DNA of 40,423 nucleotides, taken from Octopus sinensis. Lineage: Eukaryota. The translations under genes and the position numbers were made by a program. Positions 8,517-36,256 of this stretch are shown here, one piece after another (within the stretch, counting starts at the first letter, position 1; every line of letters begins with the position of its first letter). Location of the stretch: contig NW_021831923.1 in NCBI RefSeq assembly GCF_006345805.1, forward strand, positions 1 through 40,423, given 5' to 3'. The notes below the pieces were generated by a model. The model was not told where the DNA came from, searched no databases, and was given only the letters and a program-made list of their open reading frames with translations.

Positions 8517-9055
8517 CGAGCTGGCAGAGTCGTTAAGCACACCGGGCGTAATGCTTAGCGGTATTTCGCCTGCCGCTACGTTCTGAGTTCAAATTCCGCC
8601 CAGGTCGACTTTGCCTTTCATCCTTTCGGGGTCGATTAAAATAAGTACCAGTTACGCACTGTCGTCGATATAATCGACTTAATCCGTTTGTCTGTCCGTG
8701 TTTGTTCCCTCTGTGTTTAGCCCCTTGTGGGTAGTAAAGAAATAGTTATTTCGTCTGCCGCTACGTTCTGAGTTCAAATTCCGCCCAGGTCGACTTTGCC
8801 TTTCATCCTTTCGGGGTCGATTAAATAAGTACCAGTTACACACTGGGGTCGATGTAATCGACTTAATACCTATGTCTGTCCTTGTTTGTCCCCTCTGTGT
8901 TTAGCCCCTTGTAGGTAGTAAAGAAATAGGTATTTCGTCTGCCGCTACGTTCTGAGTTCAAATTCCGCTGAGGTCAACTTTGCTTTTCATCCTTTCGGGA
9001 TCGATAAATTAAGTACCAGTTGCGTACTGGGGTTAATCTAATCAATTTCACCCCC
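8517..9055 (+). mobile_element. SINE family O trimer (one head plus three bodies, period about 185 bp)
   Basis: Units begin at 8561, 8746 and 8930, each containing ctacgttctgagttcaaattccgc...gtcgactttgcctttcatcctttcgg. Confidence 0.9.
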
Positions 9056-11094: not shown

Positions 11095-11445
11095 GTGATC
11101 TATGATCATGAACGGAAGTAGTGGGGGAGTATCATAGCCATGTGCTTAGAGGAATCCACCCCTGGAAGAATGGGCTTTTCGTTCAACATCCTTAAAGAAC
11201 CCTAATTCAAGGACCATATGAGCGGGATGGGCTACTCGACTTCAGGAAAAGAAGAAAGTTTTTGGACCCACCTGCAAGGTCATGCTCTGTTTAACTTGAT
11301 ATGAGATCGCCATGTCGCGCACACATGGTTTAGATGAATGTGCCCCGTGTACTCTTATCAGAAGGGTAGTCATGATGGGTATACTGGGCTTTGTATATTT
11401 TATCCCAGTGTCACATTGATAGTATGCACTGCTATCTCACTCAAT
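11095..11445 (+). mobile_element. Non-coding interspersed repeat (family D) ending in (AAT)n
   Basis: Collinear with the reverse complement of 32756-33110 (aagtagtgggg...gcgggatgggctactc...cctgcaaggtcatg...ctcactcaat). It runs into the (AAT)n array at 11446-11568. Confidence 0.8.
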
Positions 11446-11452
11446 GATGATG

Positions 11453-11492
<40 letters not shown>

Positions 11493-11505
11493 TAATAATA
11501 ATAAC

Positions 11506-11568
<63 letters not shown>

Positions 11569-11780: not shown

Positions 11781-12140
11781 CCTATCACAATGCCTGGAAT
11801 TTAAGGGGAGGGCGATGGACGATGATATCGACCCCAGTACTTGAATGGTAGTTAATTTATCGACCTCGAAAGCTTGAAAGTCAAAGTCGACCTCGGCGGA
11901 ACTTGAACTCAGAACTTAAAGACAGACGAAGTGCCGCTAGCATTTTTGCCAGCTTGCTAACCATTCTGCAAGGTCACCGCTTTAATAATAATAATAATAA
12001 TAATGAGAAGAAGAAGAAGAAGAAGAAGAAGAAGAAGAAGAAGAAGAAGAAGAAGAAGAAGAAGAAGAAGAAGAAGAAGAAGAAGAGAAGAAGAAGAAGA
12101 AGAAGAAGAAGAAGAAGAAGAAGAAGAAGAAGAAGAAGAA
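11446..12140. repeat. Trinucleotide arrays: (AAT)n 11446-11568, (AAC)n(AAT)n 11690-11780, (AAT)n(AAG)n 11984-12140
   Basis: Directly visible; source of the poly-N, poly-K and poly-R ORFs. Confidence 0.95.
11781..11980 (-). mobile_element. SINE family O copy
   Basis: aaagtcgacctcggcggaacttgaactcagaac is the reverse complement of the family core. Confidence 0.8.
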
Positions 12141-12350
12141 GAGGGTCCGTGAATAAAGATATAGAGAAATGGTTGAAGGATATTCGAATAGAATATTTTG
12201 TAGAGCTTCTACTAAAGTTTGTCTCTCAGGCACAAGAAATATTATCAAGAGGATTTTAAGCAGGTGAAAAACTACTGAAAACTAGTGGATATCTAAGGTT
12301 ACAGGTAGTAACCCGCTACCCACAAATTCTGCAAGGAATAAGAAGTAACT
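12141..12350 (+). mobile_element. R4/Dong-type non-LTR element, 3' end
   Basis: GSVNKDIEKWLKDIRIEYFVELL matches GTVSKNIDK*LKNIGIECPVEFP of 35085-35619, and they share the 3' UTR ctaaggttacaggtagtaa.ccgcta.ccaca. The 5' junction lies on an (AAG)n array. Confidence 0.7.
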
Positions 12351-17206: not shown

Positions 17207-17752
17207 GGGCCGTGACCTGTTACAGTTAGGGAACTTTTATAAAATAACAGCAGTTGAACTAGAAAAGTACTTAAAAAAGAAAAGTGGAAGACTACTACAT
17301 GCAATAGAGCAACACAAGGAAAAAGAGCGCTTTTCTCTTGTATACAAGAAGGCAGCAAAATACAAAACAGAAGCAAACTACACTGATACATTGACTTCAG
17401 ATGACAACATACAGAAATGGTCAGAGACAAAAAAAAAACATGAAAACACAACTACAAAAGACACACTAAAGAAGAAATGGAAAGAAAAAATCCCTTCATG
17501 GCTAATACCCTGCAAAATGTGAAGAGAAGAGGAAGTGAGCGTAAGTAAAAATCTAACAATAACTCAAAAGCTCTGAACTAAAAGCTGAAACTGAAGGACT
17601 GATTTTTCGCTGCACAAGACCAAGGCCTGACTACGAACTACTATAAAAACAAAATCCTGAAAAGAGGTTTCTAACACCAAACGCAGAATGTGCAACCAGC
17701 ACAATGAGACAATTGACCACATCATCATTGGCTGTCCAGTCCTTGCCAAATC

Positions 17753-17814
<62 letters not shown>

Positions 17815-17955
17815 CACAACGGAGAAAGGGATTAATTACATTGTAGTTATATGCCAACAATATAATATAGAAACTGACAATAAATGGTATTAACATGTGC
17901 CAAACAAGGCACAAGACAACGACCAAACCACAATCATCTGGGGTATGTCTGTTCA
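17207..17955 (+). mobile_element. R4/Dong-type non-LTR element, internal fragment (post-RT region to CCHC knuckle)
   Basis: Shifted frames give GRDLLQL, KKKWKEK.LHG, SELKAETEGLI.AAQDQGL, RMCNQHNETIDHIIIGCPVLAKS and ICQQYNIETDNKWY, all typical of R4-clade ORFs. Confidence 0.8.
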
Positions 17956-18039
17956 AATCACCCAGATATAATAATCAAGAACATTATTTACATTATTTAC
18001 ATTTGACGGATATTTGTCCTCACCTTGCTTGTTGTTAAC

Positions 18040-18510
18040 ACCGTTCTGCTGCCAACTGTTGTACATACCTGTTGTGAGGCACCCGAAAAAATTCAGTGCA
18101 TGACGATAAAGCTCGTAGTGTAGACGATCCAAACTTGGCGACTTCTCCATTGTGTATTCCGTCATCGCTTGTCGTATTTTGTCAGCTGATATCGGACTTT
18201 CGCAGAACTTCGCATCCTCTGTCGATAGCTGCGGTAGGCCGTCGAGGTAGGTGACAAGTCCAACCTCGACTTGTTTCAATGTCTGCCTCAAACAGTTGAA
18301 CAAAATGTCATTAAAAAACCGCACACATTTGCTCGTGATTTAGTAGCACACCTCTCTTCTGATCTGCCGAAGAGAGATATGTGACTCTGTTGTGGCAGTG
18401 CCTCTCTGCAACCCGAACCCATCGAAAGGCTTTCGTTGCCCCATCCACCGCTCTGACTCTGACAACACAACCTTTGTGCTTAAAATCGATCAAGTCCATC
18501 GCAGTAGTCT
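18040..18510 (-). mobile_element. L1/Tx1-type ORF2 fragment (endonuclease-RT linker to start of RT)
   Basis: SPISADKIRQAMTEYTMEKSPSLDRLHYELY resembles the PI..EI..A....KSPG.DG...E.Y motif. The upstream frame gives ATKAFRWVRVAE. Confidence 0.7.
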
Positions 18511-18576
18511 TCTACTATAGAATTCCTTATCACTATTTCTTTATGAACCTAATTGATTCTAATCTAATAATAATAA

Positions 18577-18607
<31 letters not shown>

Positions 18608-19996
18608 GTAATAATAATAATAATGACCCAAAATGGAGTATAACTTCTGTAAATAATTCCGATTTAACGCAATACAATATCCAATGTCATTTCTTTGATG
18701 CTACTCTACATCTTACAATATACACTGGATACTAGAGCATTCTCTTCATCCTTACCCAGTCATGTAATGTTAAAAGCAACGAGATATTCCATCTAAATAG
18801 CATAATCTGATCCCAAACCTTCCAACCACTACTTTTTTGTTACAGGAAACAGTATAACAAAAGCTATGTTAGACCCAAAAGTGACTTAGCGTGATTTTTC
18901 CTATTCGATTTCAAACAAGTAAAAAAAAAACTTACGCAGCATTGGATGTAGATTTTAGGGAAGGTATTGAGTTCATAAACTCTAACTAGTATTTGGTTAG
19001 TATATATTTTGAACGATAAAAAATGATGTCGACTTTATCAGTGTTTAAACTAAATACATAAAGATATTTAACTATACTTAAGGCAAGATATACCGTGTTG
19101 TGTTATACCATTTTCCTCTCATACACCTCCATAATAGAAATAATGATTTTAAAATATTTTTCCTAACCGTAGGCTCAGCTGAACTGAAGTGTGACATATT
19201 TTGTTCGACGCACTAACGATTCTAACAATCATACCATATACAGCAGGAAACAAAATCATTTCTGACATAATTTCAGCATCTCATATACTTGAGTGTTGAA
19301 CAAATCGATCAGCTTAATTCAAGTCCTTGTCTTATAGCTAAGTTCATATTTTATTGACATCGAGATCGAACGAAATGAAAATCCCTGTCTCTTTAGGATT
19401 CGAACTCGGAACGTGAAAGATGATAATTAAAAAGAAGCAGGGTATTTAATCTCGTGTTTCTACCATATTTGCTGATCCACACTATGAAGGTAACTCCAAA
19501 AATTAATGAACATGTCATGATAATAACTGTGCAAATTTAACTTAAATAAAATAGAAACAAATGATTGAAATAATAACAAAAATACTACCATAAAAGTGCA
19601 AATACATATACGAAAAAACATAGAAAAGTCAACAAAAACACATAGAAATAAAGCAATCGAACAAATAAATAAAAGAAACACATAAACGAGAAAAGATAAA
19701 AAAAAATCGATCGAAGAGTCTCTAGAAGCGTTTGTTTGAATTACAAGATAGTCGATATCTTGAAGCCCACGATAAAAGAATGCCAGAAAACTTCAAACCA
19801 ATTACATTTTAGTCCAAAAATAAATAAAGTCCAATCGTGAATAGATCGAGACAAAAAAAAATATATATATAAATATACAAATACAAAAAAAAAAATAAAG
19901 TAACAACAATAAAACAGTAAATGAGATCCTACAATTACCTTTTTATAACAATTGACAAGGAGAAACTAGACCGGTGCGCTTGGAGGCGAAAAAGAA

Positions 19997-29105: not shown

Positions 29106-29517
29106 TGCGTCTCTCTTTAATGAATGTCCTAGAAACTTTACACTGCCTTGGTGGTTAGGGTGTTGGACTTATGATCAAAAGATCGTGATTTCGATTCCTG
29201 GACCGGGTGACGTGTTGTGTTCTTTTTATTATGATTATTGTTTTTGTTGTTGTTGTTGTTGTTGTTATTATTATCATATTATTATTATTCAATAGTTTTA
29301 ATTTTATAGCGTGCTTTCACTTCACTACCGAGCGCAACTCTGTGTGCCTTGGGTATTATTATTATTGTAGACAGACAGACAGGCAGAGAGACAGAGACAG
29401 AGAGACAGACAGAGTCAGCGCACTACTTTCTTGGCTTCACTTGGGATGTAAGATATTCTTCTTCTTCTTCTTCTTCTTCTTCTTATTATTATTATTATTA
29501 TTATTTTATTATTATTA

Positions 29518-29560
<43 letters not shown>

Positions 29561-30379
29561 GTTATTATTATTATTATTATTATTATCATCATTATATAGT
29601 CAACAGCATTCGTTCAGTTTCAGTCTACCAAATCGCTAGACAAATGCTTTGGTCCACTCACGACACTTGTTCAAGTGAGTGGGCCAGCAACTGCGTGGAT
29701 AGGAAGCAAACTTCTTACCACACTGCCACGCCTGCATTTACATATAATCACAGGTTTTTCAGGAATTTATTATTGATATACACACACACTTACGCATGTA
29801 CACATATGCACTTTCTAGTATTCGCACGAGGTCTGAAATATTTGTGCGTGTTGGGGGGACGCGCACTAATCGAATACATCGTCCCCATTTCGCAGCTTGT
29901 TCTTATTTCATCAACCTCAGCGAAGTCAACATCGGTGACATCTGATCTCAGAACTTAAGGCCGGAAGAAGTGCCATACAGAACCTTATTCTCTGCTGTAA
30001 GTGATTCCGTCAACTCGGCGCTTATGTACATGTGTGTGTAAGTGTGTACGTATATTTATACATATATGCATACGTACATTTATATATATATATCTATGGT
30101 TACATATAAGCAAACACATACATACGTTCACATATCTATATATATATACACAAGTAATGCATTAAGCTGTAACAAATTCACCCAGTGCTCTTATTCTGAC
30201 TTAGTTAACGCAATCTGCCGAAAAACAAAACACATAAAAGTAAGTCTAATTGATATCACTTCTCGATTGAAGCTTTAAATATTTCTCCAAACTCACGTCA
30301 AGCCGTATGACAGAAGATACATAATGATAACAACAGCTTAGAGTAATAATATAATAATAATAATAATAATAATATAATA

Positions 30380-31486: not shown

Positions 31487-32755
31487 TATATGCATGTATA
31501 TATGTATGTGTGTACACATTGTTGCTTATCCGCGTCTAAATGCTGTTCATAAAGGTACATATGTTTCAGAAATTGTCCATAACCATACAATATATAAAGA
31601 AAATTAAATAGTTGTGTAAAAGTATATTGAGAGTAAGCTTACATTGTACATGTATGTATATATATGCATGTATGTATGTATATATGTATGTATGTATGTA
31701 TGCATGCATGCATTCATGTATGTATGTATGTATGTATGTATGTATGTATGTATGTATGTATGTATGTATGTATGTATGTATGTATGTATGTATGTATGTA
31801 TGTATGTATGTATGTATGTATTGATTTATATGTTTCCAATTATATCCGATTGGATATTATTGATAGACGTGTCTTGATTGATATTAAAACAAAATTGGTG
31901 TGAAGTGGAAAATAAAGTGCGAACATTTATGTGGTTAATTGGATAAGGAAACTCTAATGTTAAAAGTGGTTGACAGGAAGTGAAATACGTTTAGCGGAAG
32001 CATTAGATATTAAACTGACAGCATCTTTAGACTTATCACTAGTTATCAACTACATGTTCGAAATTACATGATAATTCATTGGTAAAATTAATAGAAATAA
32101 TTCTTCTTTTCTTGATATTTACATAGTATCTATCGGAGTGGATTCTAACAAGAAAACTTTATTAGTAATTTAAGGGTAGTAATGCCCTTATCTCGTTTGA
32201 TATTCATAGATGTGTATTTAACGTAAAATATTCAGCTTATTTAAGTGTATATTTAGCTTGGAAATACAAATATTTCTAGTTCGAATACAGACTGGAGGTT
32301 TGTATCTAAGCTTATGACATCTGGTGACGAACGGACATTAAAATGGTCGAAATATATTGTACATGTAAATATGACATTAAGAAAATATATATACAAAAAT
32401 CTTTGCTCTTCGTAATAGAACAGTTTTCAATATTAATGCAATTCTCATAGTTACACCGATCTCGTTAAGAAAAATTACCAAGTCTGTTGGACACCAAAAA
32501 CTAATGGGTTTAATTTTGCAGAAGCCTTCCACAATCCTTTGCATTTCCCTTGCAAACGCCCTGAGATTTTTCTCTGCCTTTCCCCTGTTTTGTAATCACT
32601 ACGTTCATATCAGGTGACAGCCGCATCTACGATGATGCACTATTTTGACACTGTGTTCAGAATAATTTATAGACGTCTTGTTTGAATCTCGTAATCAGTC
32701 TTTACATAAGATCTTAAAATAATCGCTTTATGTTACATTCTTCTTCTTATTATTA

Positions 32756-33219
32756 TTGAGTGAGAGAGCAGTTCATGCCATCAAAGTGACACTGGGGATA
32801 AAATATACGAAGTCCAATATACCCATCATGACTACCCGTCTGATAAGGGTACACCAGGCACATGCATCACCATAGTGAGCGACATGGTGATCTCATATCA
32901 AGATAAACAGCACATGACCTTGCAGGTGGGGCCCAGTAGTAATTTTCTTCAGGTTGAGTAGCCCATCCCGCTCAAACGGTCCCTGAATAAGGGGAGTTTG
33001 TAAGTGATGTTTGAGGTGTTGACGCATGTTTCCAGAGGTGAATTATTCAACCCCAAAGAATCCCTCTCAACACATCGCTATGATGCTCCCCCCACTACTT
33101 CTGCTCGTGATCAGAGATGCACAAATCGTCAGCCACTAAGGGGCATGCTCAACTGGTTATGGTCAAACAACTGACAAGCAAATCGTGGTATGAGCAGAAT
33201 ATTTGCTGTAGCCCATCTT
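32756..33219 (-). mobile_element. Family D non-coding repeat, both ends on (AAT)n
   Basis: Homologous to 11095-11445. The 5' end abuts (TTA)n at 33220-33300 and the 3' end reads ctcactcaa-taataataagaaga. Confidence 0.8.
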
Positions 33220-33300
33220 TTATTATTATTATCATTATATTTTTATTATTATTATTATTATTAGTATCATTATTATATTTTCATTATCATTATTATTTTT

Positions 33301-34041
33301 TTTTCTTCTTTCAATTTGCTCCATTTCTTGCCAAGTGTCTTCCCGACTCCTAGGGCAAAGAAACATAGTCATAGTATACATTGGTAGGCCATTAAACCAA
33401 ACTCAGTAGTTCGTTCATTTTTTTTTTTTTTTAAGTTAAATTAAAATACATGAGCAGCAACAGTTCTCACATCGACAATGCTCTTCTCAATACGTGTGAT
33501 GTACCAGTTAAGACAATCTTTGCACTTCTTGCAGGGATGGTAAGCCAGGGATCATTCTTCTCATTATTTTTCGGTTCCCTTCTTGATCATTCCTAGTGCT
33601 CCTACGATCACTGGTATTGTAACCGCCTTGAGATGCCACATTTTCTCAATTTCAATGAGTAGGTCTTTATATTTTCTGAGCTTGTCAAACTCTTTCGCTG
33701 AGATATTATGATCACAGGGGATGCTCATGTCAATCAATAAGCAAACTTTATTGTTTTGGTCTTTCACAACAATATTGGTTTATTGGCCTTGATGGTTCGG
33801 TCTGTATGTACTGGAAAGTCCCACAGAATGGTTACATTTTCTCCTTCAGTTACAGCCTCAGGGTGGGATTATTACCACTTGTCGGCAGTTTTGATATTGT
33901 AATGCCGACTTATTAGCCAGTCGAGATATGGCCAACTCTGTCATGTCTTAATTTATACTCCACTGGTGCTAAGACTTTACATCCAGAGATTAGGTGGTCC
34001 ACTGTTTCAATCATGTCGTTGCAGAATCGGCATTTTGGGTC
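33301..34041 (-). mobile_element. R4/Dong-type element A (CCHC plus restriction-like endonuclease, 3' UTR)
   Basis: DPKCRFCNDMIETVDHLISGC, RHDRVG, ILWDFPVHTDRTIKANKP, LIDMSIPCDHN...KE..K..KY.DL and PVIVGALG form an R4-clade RLE domain. Confidence 0.9.
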
Positions 34042-34081
34042 TTTATTATTATTATTATTATTATCATTATTATCATTATAC

Positions 34082-34117
<36 letters not shown>

Positions 34118-34124
34118 CATTATT

Positions 34125-35070
34125 GTCTTTGCACATCTTCTAAGATGTTCAACGGTACAAGCTGTTCACTACCAGTGAACAACTGTAACACCCCTTATTT
34201 TTCGAGCACCATACGGAGTTTTCGAGCTGTTCCAAGCAGTGCTGTTTTCTGCAGGTGTTCCACCCTTTACTGCAGCCGCCTATTTGTTCCATGTACTTCT
34301 CAAAATTTTTACTCACTGTTCCCAAGGCTCCGATAGTTATTAGTACCATTACCACCTTTTTCAGCGACACACAACTGCTTAACCTCCCAAGCTAACCTGA
34401 CGTTTCTTTCTTCCTTATCGCATACCTTGTTGTCAGCTGGGCATGCTATATCTATGATCCAGCATCATTTGCTTTTTTTTCTCAATTAACACTATGTCTG
34501 GTTCCTATTCTCTATCTCATGGTCGCGCGCAATGGCCCAGTGGTTAGGGCAGCGGACTCGCGGTCGGAGGATCGCGGTTTCGATTCCCAGACCGGGCATT
34601 GTGAGTGTTTATTGAGCGAAAAACACCTAAAGCTCCACGAGGCTCCGGCAGGGGGTGGTGGTGAACCCTGCTGTACTCTTTCACCACAACTTTCTCTCAC
34701 TCTTTCTTCCTATTTCTCTTGTACCTGTATTTCAAGGGGCCAGCCTTGTCACATCCTGTGTGTCACGCTGAATCTCCCCGAGAACTACGTTAAGGGTACA
34801 CGTGTCTGTGGAATGCTCAGCCACTTTCACGTTAATATCACGAGCAAGCTGTTCCGTTGATCGTATCAGCTGGGACCCTCATCGTCGCAACCGACGGAGT
34901 GCTCCTATTTTATATCTCATGGTCGCACTAAGTCATAAAATACCAGAGGATCTTTGCATTATCATTTTCGATGATATCTTCGGGTTTATTGTTCGTACCA
35001 CATTTTTGCTCTGTCAAGTCCATACTTGTTGCAAAGTCTCCAAAGGACAATCCTTGCTATATTGTCTATC
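34125..35070 (-). mobile_element. R4/Dong-type element B (RLE region), interrupted by a SINE
   Basis: DNIARIVLWRLCNKYGL, ENDNAKILW, IIDIACPADNKV, TIGALGTVSKNFEKY and HLQKTALLGTARKLRMVLEK*. Confidence 0.85.
34527..34902 (+). mobile_element. Full-length tRNA-headed SINE with a 24-bp target-site duplication
   Basis: A-box tggcccagtgg and B-box-like ggtttcgattcc. The TSD copies at 34503-34526 and 34903-34926 match at 22 of 24 positions. The same tail occurs alone at about 10360-10402. Confidence 0.88.
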
Positions 35071-35084
35071 ATTATTATTATTAT

Positions 35085-35619
35085 GGTTTGGCTGATGTTC
35101 GGTCTTATGCATGGTGAGATTCATGTGGATAGCGGATTACTACCTGTAACCTTAGGTATCCACAAGTTTTCAGCTACCTTTCAAGTGCTTAGAACCCTCC
35201 TGATAATCCTTGCTGTCCCTATGAGACAAACTTTCTGTGGGAACTCTACCGGGCATTCTATTCCAATGTTCTTCAGTCATTTGTCAATATTTTTGCTTAC
35301 TGTTCCCAACACACCAATTGTTATAGGCACGGCCTTTACTGATCTCATGCTCCAAATACAAATTTTAAGGAACTGTATTTCTTTTGCTTTTCCTAGGCTT
35401 TCTTTAGAATCCTGGAATCAAACGGACATGATGGGGCGATCAGTAAACCACTTCACTTTCCCTTGTCTATATTTTTTTTGTTCAGTCTATTACTTTCTAA
35501 CGTATTGTCCATGTGAATAGCAAAGTTTCACAAAATCTTACATTTCTCCGACCCCCAGTACACTTTTGACTATGTGATTGTACCGTGTGTTTCCAGGTGC
35601 AAATCCCCATTTCTGGCAC
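35085..35619 (-). mobile_element. R4/Dong-type element C (RLE region)
   Basis: EKCKIL*NFAIHMDNTLESNR, WSMRSVKAVPITIGVLGTVSKNIDK and QKVCLIGTARIIRRVLST*. Both ends lie on (AAT)n. Confidence 0.82.
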
Positions 35620-36256
35620 TATTATTATTACTTATTTTTATCGATCCTCGGAAGGATAAAAGCAAAGTCTACCCCGGCGCTATGCATTTTTCTCGACGCG
35701 GTAACCACTCTGCCAGCTCGCCGCCTTATAATAATGATAATAGATATGAATGTGTGTATTATGTACACACACACACACACACACACACACATATCTATAT
35801 ATTATATGTTATATATTATATATTATGTATATAACATATATTAAATAATAGACATGAATGTGTGTCTGTGTGTATTACATAACACACACTCACAGATATA
35901 TATATTATATATATAAGTATGTATGTATGTATATATACACATGTGTGTGTTTGTGTTTGTGTATATTTGTGTGTGTGTGTAGATAGTCAGACAGAGACGG
36001 GTTATTCTTTTTATCGAGAAACCATAAGATAATTAAATGTCCAACATGTAGACATACACCGACAGCAATATCAACACCAACAAGGTTACCCCCGCTACCC
36101 ATACCGTCACCAATACTATCACCTGGTCTAGCTTCAATAACAAATATTACGTGACAAGTGAAGTAAATACAAAACTATTCAGACGACATCTCTCTTCCTC
36201 TCTCTGCTTTTGTCACCCAGTGTGTATACCTGTATGTGTGTGTTTATGTGCATGCG

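What the first reader, a model, noticed from the sequence alone, without database searches (positions are those of the whole stretch)
32756..35619. Head-to-tail train of four retroelements joined only by (AAT)n tracts
Seen: on the minus strand the order is RLE element C (35619-35085), (AAT)n, element B (35070-34125), (AAT)n, element A (34041-33301), (AAT)n, non-coding family D (33219-32756), then AAT/AAG. All have the same orientation. A, B and C are divergent in protein sequence and all are 5'-truncated near the CCHC knuckle. Established: Dong elements of the R4 clade insert specifically into TAA repeats. Inference: successive targeted insertions, each regenerating a target, from at least three subfamilies. 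Same-clade fragments at 12141 and 17207 also start at AAT/AAG arrays.
Basis: partly seen in the sequence, partly recalled or inferred. Interest (0 to 1): 0.72.

Follow-up and report, generated by a model that had tools for sequence, protein, structure and literature searches.

The report
Stack of dead Dong-like LINE fragments
This stretch is a pile-up of at least five broken copies of jumping genes that insert specifically into AAT repeats; each copy leaves a fresh AAT repeat for the next to land in, a known habit of this transposon family and therefore ordinary.

Summary
Every junction consists only of AAT-type repeats. C, B, A and F are 3' pieces of LINEs carrying a CCHC knuckle and a restriction-like endonuclease (RLE). 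They share only 29-60% amino-acid identity, so this is not a tandem duplication. Full-length relatives (~1100-1200 aa) have no zinc finger in the first 420 residues, then RT, CCHC and RLE, and no APE domain. Their closest solved structures are R2 proteins. Unrelated assemblies show the same head-to-tail trains joined by (AAT)n, including full-length copies that start directly after a tract. Across the sampled loci, 17 of 21 3' ends carry a sense-strand AAT tail (4.3% expected by chance). Twelve of 22 5' ends lie within 30 bp after a tract (0.5% expected). The literature reports (TAA)n targeting by Dong elements in insects, molluscs and cnidarians, and abundant Dong-R4 LINEs in octopus. R4-clade placement by RT phylogeny could not be run. 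A covarying 3' UTR stem-loop was seen in passing.

The parts
35629..35728 (-). Upstream boundary: fragment of a common octopus SINE, cut at its own TAAATAAGTA motif. Its 3' half is not present downstream of the train.
   Evidence: Alignment with SINE copies at 8560, 8744 and 11781. BLAST of the SINE 3' half finds no copy near 31-33 kb.
35621..35628 (-). Short ATAATAAT tract forming the 5' flank of C
   Evidence: Direct reading.
35085..35620 (-). Element C: 5'-truncated, degenerate 3' fragment of an RLE LINE. It contains the RLE domain, the end of the ORF and the 3' UTR.
   Evidence: tblastn. HMM hits 35172-35551, E 1e-13 and 1e-9. A 77% identical relative lies at 12155-12324.
35122..35163 (-). 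Conserved 3' UTR stem-loop of C
   Evidence: Alignment A4 and covariation counts.
35071..35084 (-). C-B junction, ATAATAATAATAAT only
   Evidence: Direct reading.
34125..35070 (-). Element B: 5'-truncated RLE LINE fragment, split by a later insertion
   Evidence: HMM hits 34195-34533 (1.1e-8) and 34904-35066. tblastn.
34527..34902 (+). Interspersed repeat (tRNA-like head by eye) inserted into B in the opposite orientation. The 24-bp target duplication is 34503-34526 / 34903-34926.
   Evidence: Self-BLAST, 22/24 identical. A 90.7% identical copy lies in O. sinensis L011 145-324. ARAGORN calls no tRNA here.
34152..34193 (-). Conserved 3' UTR stem-loop of B
34042..34124 (-). B-A junction, 83 bp of AAT variants only
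   Evidence: Direct reading. TRF and regex tracts.
33301..34041 (-). Element A: starts exactly at the CCHC knuckle (DPKCRFC...H....C). It runs through the RLE domain, the ORF end near 33470 and a ~170-nt 3' UTR. It is dead, with at least 2 frameshifts and several stops.
   Evidence: Translation. 64-65% aa identity to P0001-P0004 at E 1e-80. HMM 1.6e-28.
33321..33362 (-). Conserved 3' UTR stem-loop of A
33222..33300 (-). A-D junction, impure AAT tract
   Evidence: Direct reading.
32758..33221 (-). Element D: non-coding repeat with an AAT tail and a discrete 5' end (AAAAGATGGGCTACAGC). It lacks the LINE 3' stem-loop.
   Evidence: Three-copy alignment. 91% identity to L011 11058-11555.
32737..32757 (-). 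D-F junction, AATAATAATAAGAAGAAGAAT
   Evidence: Direct reading.
32377..32736 (-). Its ORF ends at 32377. Its 3' end is undefined and it has no clear AAT tail.
   Evidence: HMM hit 32487-32711, profile positions 232-306, i-E 6.6e-6. Reading.
11098..11568 (+). D' : second D-family copy (11098-11444) plus its (AAT)n tail. It has no AAT on its 5' side.
11983..12330 (+). (TAA)7(AAG)46 array followed by C' (12144-12330), a very short C-family 3' fragment that carries the stem-loop
16907..17968 (+). (AAT)3(AAC)7...(AAG)n composite array followed by E (17208-17968). E is an RLE LINE fragment running from the GGRGL motif through the CCHC knuckle to the PD motif. It is broken by (AT)n(AG)n and cut at its 3' side.

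Best explanation
The region is a landing pad. An AAT microsatellite was hit repeatedly by (TAA)n-specific non-LTR retrotransposons of the Dong type (R4 clade, restriction-like endonuclease) and by one non-autonomous AAT-tailed element, D.

Inferred mechanism, from what is established for R2 and Dong:
1. The element's protein nicks the TTA strand of the repeat.
2. The (UAA)n end of the RNA pairs with the nicked repeat.
3. Reverse transcription starts there (target-primed reverse transcription, TPRT) and usually stops early, which gives 0.4-0.75 kb 3' fragments.
4. The second strand is cut within the same repeat.

Each insertion therefore splits the microsatellite, leaves AAT repeats on both sides, and adds its own tail. 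The repeat has a polarity, so every new copy must enter in the same orientation. Repeated hits by different subfamilies build a head-to-tail train with nothing but AAT between members.

All copies here are dead. They are frameshifted, carry stop codons, and one is hit by a SINE-type repeat. The train has no evident host function.

What is shown: the anatomy, the homology, the family-wide association of both element ends with sense-strand (AAT)n, and the same trains in other genomes. What is inferred: the nicking and priming chemistry, and the order of insertions.
For: - Anatomy: five co-oriented elements with only AAT-type junctions.
- Family: CCHC plus RLE homology for A, B, C, F and E. Eight full-length relatives scanned against Pfam have RVT_1 and no APE domain, and all 16 in the panel have the C-terminal CCHC and no zinc-finger-like motif in the first 420 residues. 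The closest solved structures are R2 proteins.
- Divergent members: 29-60% aa identity between A, B and C. Neighbours in other trains are at most 73% identical in DNA.
- Trains elsewhere: L012 has 4 members, L013 has 3 and L015 has 4-5. All are on one strand and joined by (AAT)n, and full-length 5' UTRs start right after a tract.
- Statistics: 17 of 21 3' ends have a sense AAT tail within 400 bp, against 4.3% expected. Twelve of 22 5' ends (16 of 22 with composite or short tracts) lie within 30 bp after a sense tract, against 0.5% expected. There are 18 tracts on the element strand and 0 on the other strand in L012-L015.
- Train heads: the first members in L013 and L012 have AAT-type microsatellite upstream with no recognisable element before it, and L018 starts with an AAT tract.
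- Independent A-then-D adjacency in O. sinensis L011. The divergences differ (A 79%, D 91%), which argues for separate insertions.
- A shared, covarying 3' UTR stem-loop marks A, B and C as true 3' ends of one lineage.
- Literature: PMC7998251, PMC3812793, PMC3774820, PMC8967140, PMC13282606.
Against: - Six of 22 5' ends have no AAT tract (L014, L016, L015 e1 and e3, and both L011 RLE copies). A long 5' tract is therefore not obligatory, or it is often lost.
- F, C', L012 e3 and the second L011 element show no clear AAT tail.
- The 3' half of the SINE cut upstream of C is not found downstream of the train, so the original target cannot be reconstructed.
- R4-clade membership was not tested by phylogeny. 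Rfam found no HDV-like ribozyme at the full-length 5' ends.
- The sample is about 150 kb from six or seven genomes and was tabulated partly by hand.
Confidence: 0.8

Rival explanations
1. Single-event concatemer. During one TPRT event the reverse transcriptase reached the end of one (broken) RNA and jumped onto the (UAA)n tail of another RNA, several times. This laid down C-B-A-D-F, or part of it, in one insertion.
For: End-to-end template jumping is an established in vitro property of the R2 reverse transcriptase (my own knowledge). It would give the same architecture: same orientation and only tail sequence between members.
Against: - It needs four consecutive jumps from RNAs broken at different internal points.
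- Members differ in decay. B alone carries a later insertion with a diverged TSD. In L012 the second member has far longer open frames than the first, and L015 e2 alone carries an LTR-element insertion.
- A and D differ in divergence from their L011 counterparts, 79% against 91%.
- Solitary copies and train heads also sit at AAT tracts.
Confidence: 0.1
2. AAT is only a 3' tail. The elements insert without sequence preference and lie next to each other by chance or by regional accumulation of repeats.
For: Some solitary copies have a tail but no 5' tract (L014, L016). The window is very repeat-rich.
Against: - There is no unique DNA at any of four junctions.
- 12-16 of 22 5' ends lie at a sense tract, against 0.5% expected.
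- Full-length copies start right after tracts.
- Orientation relative to the repeat is invariant.
Confidence: 0.03
3. The mechanism is the same, but the elements belong to another RLE clade (for example a microsatellite-specific HERO lineage) rather than R4/Dong.
For: PMC4640811 states that some HERO families are microsatellite-specific. Hero families exist in O. vulgaris (PMC13282606). No RT phylogeny with labelled references could be run. The Myb/SANT test was inconclusive.
Against: - Dong-R4 is far more abundant than Hero in octopus: 1129 against 13 recent insertions (PMC13282606).
- The (TAA)n target, the zinc-finger-free N-terminus with a W-x-x-E-E motif, and the spread over cnidarians, molluscs and crustaceans match the Dong-like set of PMC7998251.
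Confidence: 0.12
4. Tandem duplication or unequal crossing-over between AAT tracts created the array.
For: Microsatellites can mediate unequal exchange (general knowledge).
Against: The members are not copies of each other: 29-60% aa identity, almost no DNA similarity, and different truncation points. The same holds in other trains.
Confidence: 0.02

Closest known systems
Dong (Bombyx mori) and Dong-like elements such as DongAg and DongBg of the snail Biomphalaria glabrata; RepeatMasker class LINE/Dong-R4
   Same: Single-ORF LINE with RT, a C-terminal CCHC knuckle and an RLE. No N-terminal zinc finger. (TAA)n on both sides in one orientation. Present in molluscs and cnidarians (PMC7998251, PMC3812793, PMC3774820). 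Abundant in octopus (PMC8967140, PMC13282606).
   Different: No direct sequence comparison with Dong itself was possible here. The window holds only dead 3' fragments of at least three or four divergent subfamilies. I found no paper in the held library that describes the multi-member train arrangement.
R4 (Ascaris) and R2 (28S rDNA-specific RLE LINEs)
   Same: Same enzyme layout and TPRT logic. R2 proteins are the closest solved structures (E 5e-28 over the RT; the RLE aligns weakly).
   Different: R2 and R4 target one site in rDNA, and R2 carries N-terminal zinc fingers plus Myb. Here the target is a microsatellite, and no zinc-finger-like motif occurs in the first 420 residues of 16 relatives.
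Tandem or head-to-tail arrays of other target-specific LINEs (Utopia in U2 genes; telomeric TRAS/SART and HeT-A/TART arrays)
   Same: A regenerated or repeated target leads to co-oriented arrays of elements. Utopia-1_NVit is 'occasionally inserted in tandem' (PMC4640811). The telomeric arrays are from my own knowledge.
   Different: Here the target is the element's own kind of tail, a simple trinucleotide repeat. Any member, of any subfamily and however truncated, re-creates the target.
Microsatellite-specific HERO and NeSL-related (Togen) families
   Same: RLE LINEs that insert into microsatellites (PMC4640811).
   Different: Togen targets (TG)n. The HERO targets are not given in the text I read. 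Clade not tested here.

Membership tests
RLE-encoding non-LTR retrotransposons (R2 group) | C-terminal CCHC knuckle followed by a PD-(D/E)xK restriction-like endonuclease domain | tested here: met
   A reads C-x2-C-x9-H-x4-C, then ...ILWDF...KP(D lost)...IDMS...KYKDL. HMM and tblastn hits cover A, B, C, E and F. The motif is present in all 16 full-length relatives. The RLE aligns weakly to R2 chain 9nl3_A.
RLE-encoding non-LTR retrotransposons (R2 group) | Reverse transcriptase upstream in the same ORF, and no APE endonuclease | tested here: met
   Eight full-length relatives have RVT_1 at about residues 450-720 and no Exo_endo_phos hit. The window copies themselves are 5'-truncated and lack the RT.
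Dong / R4 clade | Insertion into (TAA)n, with the repeat on both sides and a fixed orientation | tested here: met
   Window junctions. Trains and full-length copies in L012, L013 and L015. Enrichment over chance and strand bias. Six of 22 5' ends lack a tract.
Dong / R4 clade | N-terminus without zinc fingers | tested here: met
   No C..C...H...H/C pattern in the first 420 residues of 16 relatives. Two of them have no cysteine there at all.
Dong / R4 clade | Divergent N-terminal Myb/SANT-like domain (PMC7998251) | tested here: inconclusive
   A conserved K-W-[ST]-x-E-E...Y...W...Q-R-R-x-I block is present. There is no Pfam hit. hhalign against a c-Myb repeat aligns in register but with 3% probability.
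Dong / R4 clade | RT phylogeny groups with R4, Dong and Rex6 rather than R2, NeSL, CRE or HERO | not testable with these tools
   No labelled reference sequences were reachable. The clusters carry no informative names, the original papers are not held, and the supplements hold no sequences.
Dong / R4 clade | HDV-like self-cleaving ribozyme at the 5' end (PMC3774820) | tested here: inconclusive
   Not applicable to the truncated window copies. In full-length relatives Rfam gives no hit. By eye a GGCGTCCGGC(T/G)GGGG core resembling the HDV P3/P1 region is conserved between L012 and L013 5' UTRs.
SINE / non-autonomous partner of the LINE (for element D) | 3' end shared with the partner LINE; pol III-type head | tested here: not met
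   D has no similarity to the 3' ends of A, B or C and lacks their stem-loop. There is no tRNA call and no Rfam hit. D shares only the (AAT)n tail and has a discrete 5' end in 2 of 3 copies.

The most novel reading that the evidence does not exclude
The trains are not, or not only, successive insertions. They would be concatemers made in a single integration event, in which the Dong-type reverse transcriptase jumps from the end of one template onto the (UAA)n tail of another RNA, including non-autonomous RNAs such as D. Under this reading the AAT tail together with the conserved 3' stem-loop acts as a universal re-initiation module shared by subfamilies that are only about 30% identical in protein.
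Probability: 0.1. Interest if true: 0.45.

Novelty: new member of a known kind. Interest (0 to 1): 0.25.

Why it matters
Mostly it settles an annotation question. The train is a textbook consequence of (TAA)n-specific Dong-type LINEs, which are already known to be abundant in octopus.

It gives a compact illustration of two points. A target-specific LINE re-creates its own target, and AAT microsatellites in such genomes are largely LINE tails: all 18 tracts in the four non-octopus loci lie on the element strand, next to element ends.

The covarying 3' UTR stem-loop is shared by divergent subfamilies and by several unrelated assemblies. It is a candidate recognition element for the reverse transcriptase and could help to define 3' ends in repeat libraries.

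Tried and rejected
- Pfam on the window fragments: nothing above threshold.
- Rfam on the window, L012 and L013 at gathering score, and on two 5' UTRs at E<=1: no HDV-like ribozyme and no R2 3' element.
- ARAGORN on 32-36 kb: no tRNA, so the tRNA-like head of the insert in B rests on reading only.
- Protein search with the C peptide: no hit. No extra octopus copies of the B or C families could be collected.
- Exact look-up of a window ORF to find the source contig or alleles: not on record. No empty-site test was possible.
- Cluster names for 10 full-length relatives: none informative.
- Original Dong, R4 and mosquito R4 papers: not held. Supplements of two papers hold no reference sequences. 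No clade phylogeny could be built.
- Myb/SANT test by Pfam and hhalign: inconclusive.
- Tara contigs L001-L010 end inside the tail, so they have no 3' flank.
- Considered and rejected: A plus D as one element with an internal microsatellite. D has a discrete 5' end and a different divergence (91% against 79%), and another D copy stands alone.
- Considered and rejected: (AAG)n as an internal expansion of E or C'. No LINE sequence lies upstream of those arrays.
- Two literature searches for described Dong trains found nothing specific.
Full report
**1. What is in the sequence**

Read on the minus strand, the region is laid out as follows.

| Feature | Coordinates | Notes |
|---|---|---|
| SINE fragment | 35728-35629 | Breaks off at its own TAAATAAGTA motif |
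| 5' flank of C | 35628-35621 | ATAATAAT |
| Element C | 35620-35085 | |
| C-B junction | 35084-35071 | 14 nt of AAT repeat |
| Element B | 35070-34125 | |
| B-A junction | 34124-34042 | 83 nt of AAT variants |
| Element A | 34041-33301 | |
| A-D junction | 33300-33222 | 79 nt of impure AAT |
| Element D | 33221-32758 | Non-coding |
| D-F junction | 32757-32737 | AATAATAATAAGAAGAAGAAT |

A profile HMM built from 123 relatives hits F at 32487-32711 (profile positions 232-306, i-E 6.6e-6). The translation of F reads IL.SYVKTDYEIQTRR...CIIVDAAVT.D.NV, which is the RLE core. The train therefore has at least five members, all in one orientation.

B is split by a 376-bp interspersed repeat in the opposite orientation (34527-34902). 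That insert has a 24-bp target duplication, 22/24 identical. A 90.7% identical copy of it lies in Octopus sinensis.

**2. What the elements are**

A translates, with two frameshifts and several stops, from DPKCRFCNDMIETVDHLISGC to ...HVLRRALSM. That spans a CCHC knuckle, the RLE motifs and the end of the ORF. About 170 nt of 3' UTR follow.

A is 64-65% identical to uninterrupted ORF fragments in many assemblies, including Penaeus, Styela and O. sinensis (E down to 2e-80). B, C, E and F match the same domain at 30-48% identity. Between themselves, A-C are 29-34% identical, A-B 31-40% and B-C 48-60%. These are at least three subfamilies and not duplicates.

An exhaustive profile search found 25,010 relatives. 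Many are ORFs of 1100-1225 aa. Eight of these have RVT_1 at about residues 450-720 and no APE domain. All 16 examined have C-x2-C-x9-H-x4-C near the C-terminus and no zinc-finger-like pattern in the first 420 residues. They share an N-terminal K-W-[ST]-x-E-E...Q-R-R-x-I block. The closest solved structures are R2 proteins.

This is the architecture described for R4/Dong elements: REL endonuclease, no N-terminal zinc finger, and a divergent Myb/SANT-like domain (PMC7998251). My own Myb tests were inconclusive.

**3. Is AAT a target or only a tail?**

I fetched loci around relatives chosen only for encoding the C-terminal domain.

- **L013:** (AAT)12, then a copy truncated at aa ~501 that starts 1 nt after the tract. 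Next comes AAT, then a longer copy (protein homology from aa ~333) whose 5' UTR starts right after the tract. Next comes (ACT)n(AAT)n, then a full-length copy, then AAT, then unique DNA.
- **L012:** AAT-type microsatellite, full-length copy, AAT, full-length copy, AAT, a 76-aa stub, AAT, an 89-aa stub, AAT.
- **L015:** four to five co-oriented copies joined by AAT. One of them is split by an LTR element.
- **L018:** opens with an AAT tract 2 nt before a truncated copy.
- **L014 and L016:** solitary copies with a tail but no 5' tract of four or more units.

Neighbours within trains are at most 73% identical in DNA, or unalignable.

Counts over the window and loci L001, L011-L016 and L018:

| Measure | Observed | Expected by chance |
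|---|---|---|
| 3' ends with a sense-strand (AAT)>=4 tract (>=3 for C) within 400 bp | 17 of 21 | 4.3% |
| 5' ends within 30 bp after such a tract | 12 of 22 | 0.5% |
| 5' ends, also counting short or AAT/AAC/AAG composite tracts | 16 of 22 | 0.5% |

In L012-L015 all 18 tracts lie on the strand of the elements and none on the other strand. AAT is therefore both tail and landing site, in a fixed orientation.

**4. Evidence inside octopus**

In O. sinensis locus L011, an A-family copy is followed by about 330 bp of AAT/AAC/GAT repeats, a short minisatellite, and then a full-length D. The A-family copy is 79% identical to A and extends upstream into the RT. The L011 D is 91% identical to the window's D.

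The same A-then-D order at a non-orthologous locus, with different divergences, is what repeated insertion into resident tails predicts.

- C' (12144) follows (TAA)7(AAG)46.
- E (17208) follows (AAT)3(AAC)7...(AAG)~90.

**5. Mechanism**

Shown here: the architecture and the statistical association of both element ends with sense-strand (AAT)n.

Inferred from the established R2 and Dong biology (PMC10499050 for R2 TPRT; PMC3774820 for Dong with (TAA)n upstream and a 5' ribozyme):
1. The RLE nicks the TTA strand.
2. The (UAA)n RNA end pairs with the nicked repeat.
3. TPRT follows, with frequent early termination.
4. The second strand is cut within the same repeat.

Each event splits the tract and adds a tail. 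The polarity of the repeat forces one orientation. The uniform orientation of the five members is thus a consequence of the target, not independent evidence.

**6. Rivals**

- Tandem duplication is excluded by the divergence of the members.
- Chance adjacency is excluded by the statistics.
- A single-event concatemer made by template jumping cannot be excluded. It is less parsimonious because it needs four jumps from differently broken RNAs. It also fits poorly with the unequal decay of members and with the 79% against 91% contrast.
- Membership in another RLE clade remains possible because no labelled references were reachable. PMC4640811 notes microsatellite-specific HERO families. However, Dong-R4 outnumbers Hero about 90-fold among recent O. 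vulgaris insertions (PMC13282606).

**7. Known or new**

Dong-type (TAA)n targeting is established, including in molluscs (PMC3812793, PMC7998251). Dong-R4 LINEs are a known major octopus repeat class (PMC8967140). The train is an expected by-product. I found no paper in the held library that describes such trains for Dong, but comparable arrays are known for other target-specific LINEs. I rate it a new instance of a known kind, of low interest.

**8. Side observation**

Forty to 75 nt upstream of the tail, A, B, C, C', a 65-nt stub near 29.3 kb, and relatives in six other loci share a two-helix stem-loop (CCYWRGG-stem-loop-stem-CCGG framed by an outer helix).

- Of 13 pairs, 12 show compensatory changes.
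- 85.6% of cells pair, against 60.6% in shuffles (0 of 500 shuffles reach it) and 30-54% when the partner is slid.
- The 15 segments were picked by eye from 19 ends, so the numbers are optimistic.
- D lacks the structure.

Noticed in passing
window 33321-33362, 34152-34193, 35122-35163 (all -), 12290-12330 (+); L011-L016, L001: A covarying two-helix stem-loop lies 40-75 nt upstream of the (AAT)n tail in the 3' UTRs of divergent subfamilies and in several unrelated assemblies. It has 13 pairs, 12 of them with compensatory changes. It is a candidate recognition element for the reverse transcriptase. D lacks it.
   Followed up: partly
window 29290-29640 (-): A second, miniature train. A SINE is followed by (AAT)n(AAG)9, an ~85-nt piece, (AAT)4, and a ~65-nt piece that carries the LINE 3' stem-loop. 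Then come (AAT)n(AAC)n. These look like extremely 5'-truncated copies.
   Followed up: partly
window 12144 and 17208 (+): C' and E both begin GGG(T)CCGTGA directly after long (AAG)n arrays. They correspond to different ORF positions (KAVP and KGGRGL). In both, the LINE sequence just upstream would read AAG/AAAGG. This suggests microhomology with an AAG repeat at the 5' junction.
   Followed up: no
window 18565-18635 (+) versus 34031-34041 (-): An (AAT)n tract is followed by GACCCAAAATG, the same 11 nt with which A begins after its own AAT tract. The sequences differ afterwards. Unexplained.
   Followed up: no
window 33479-34041; L012-L015: The A family is unusually conserved. It is 64-65% aa identical to copies in shrimp, a tunicate and unknown assemblies. 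It is 66-70% nt identical over 270-550 bp to loci that share no other repeat with the window. This means either slow evolution or horizontal spread.
   Followed up: no
L012 1393-1650 and 5210-5470; L013 3054-3140: The 5' UTRs of full-length relatives from different assemblies share a GGCGTCCGGC(T/G)GGGG...GCCTCATGG block that resembles the HDV-ribozyme core. In L013 it lies right at the 5' junction. Rfam does not call it.
   Followed up: partly
window 18000-18560 (-): This reads as the N-terminal part of a reverse transcriptase (…SPSLDRLHYELY…) of another LINE type, antisense to E. It sits between E and the AAT tract at 18565.
   Followed up: no
L011 10930-11057: Four and a half copies of a ~32-bp minisatellite (ATCATGTACATTGTTTTGTCTTGGTATAWAAT) sit between the AAT tail of the A-like copy and the 5' end of D.
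   Followed up: no
window 8560-9033 (+): A SINE family is arranged as a 184-bp tandem repeat of 2.6 copies at 91% identity.
   Followed up: no
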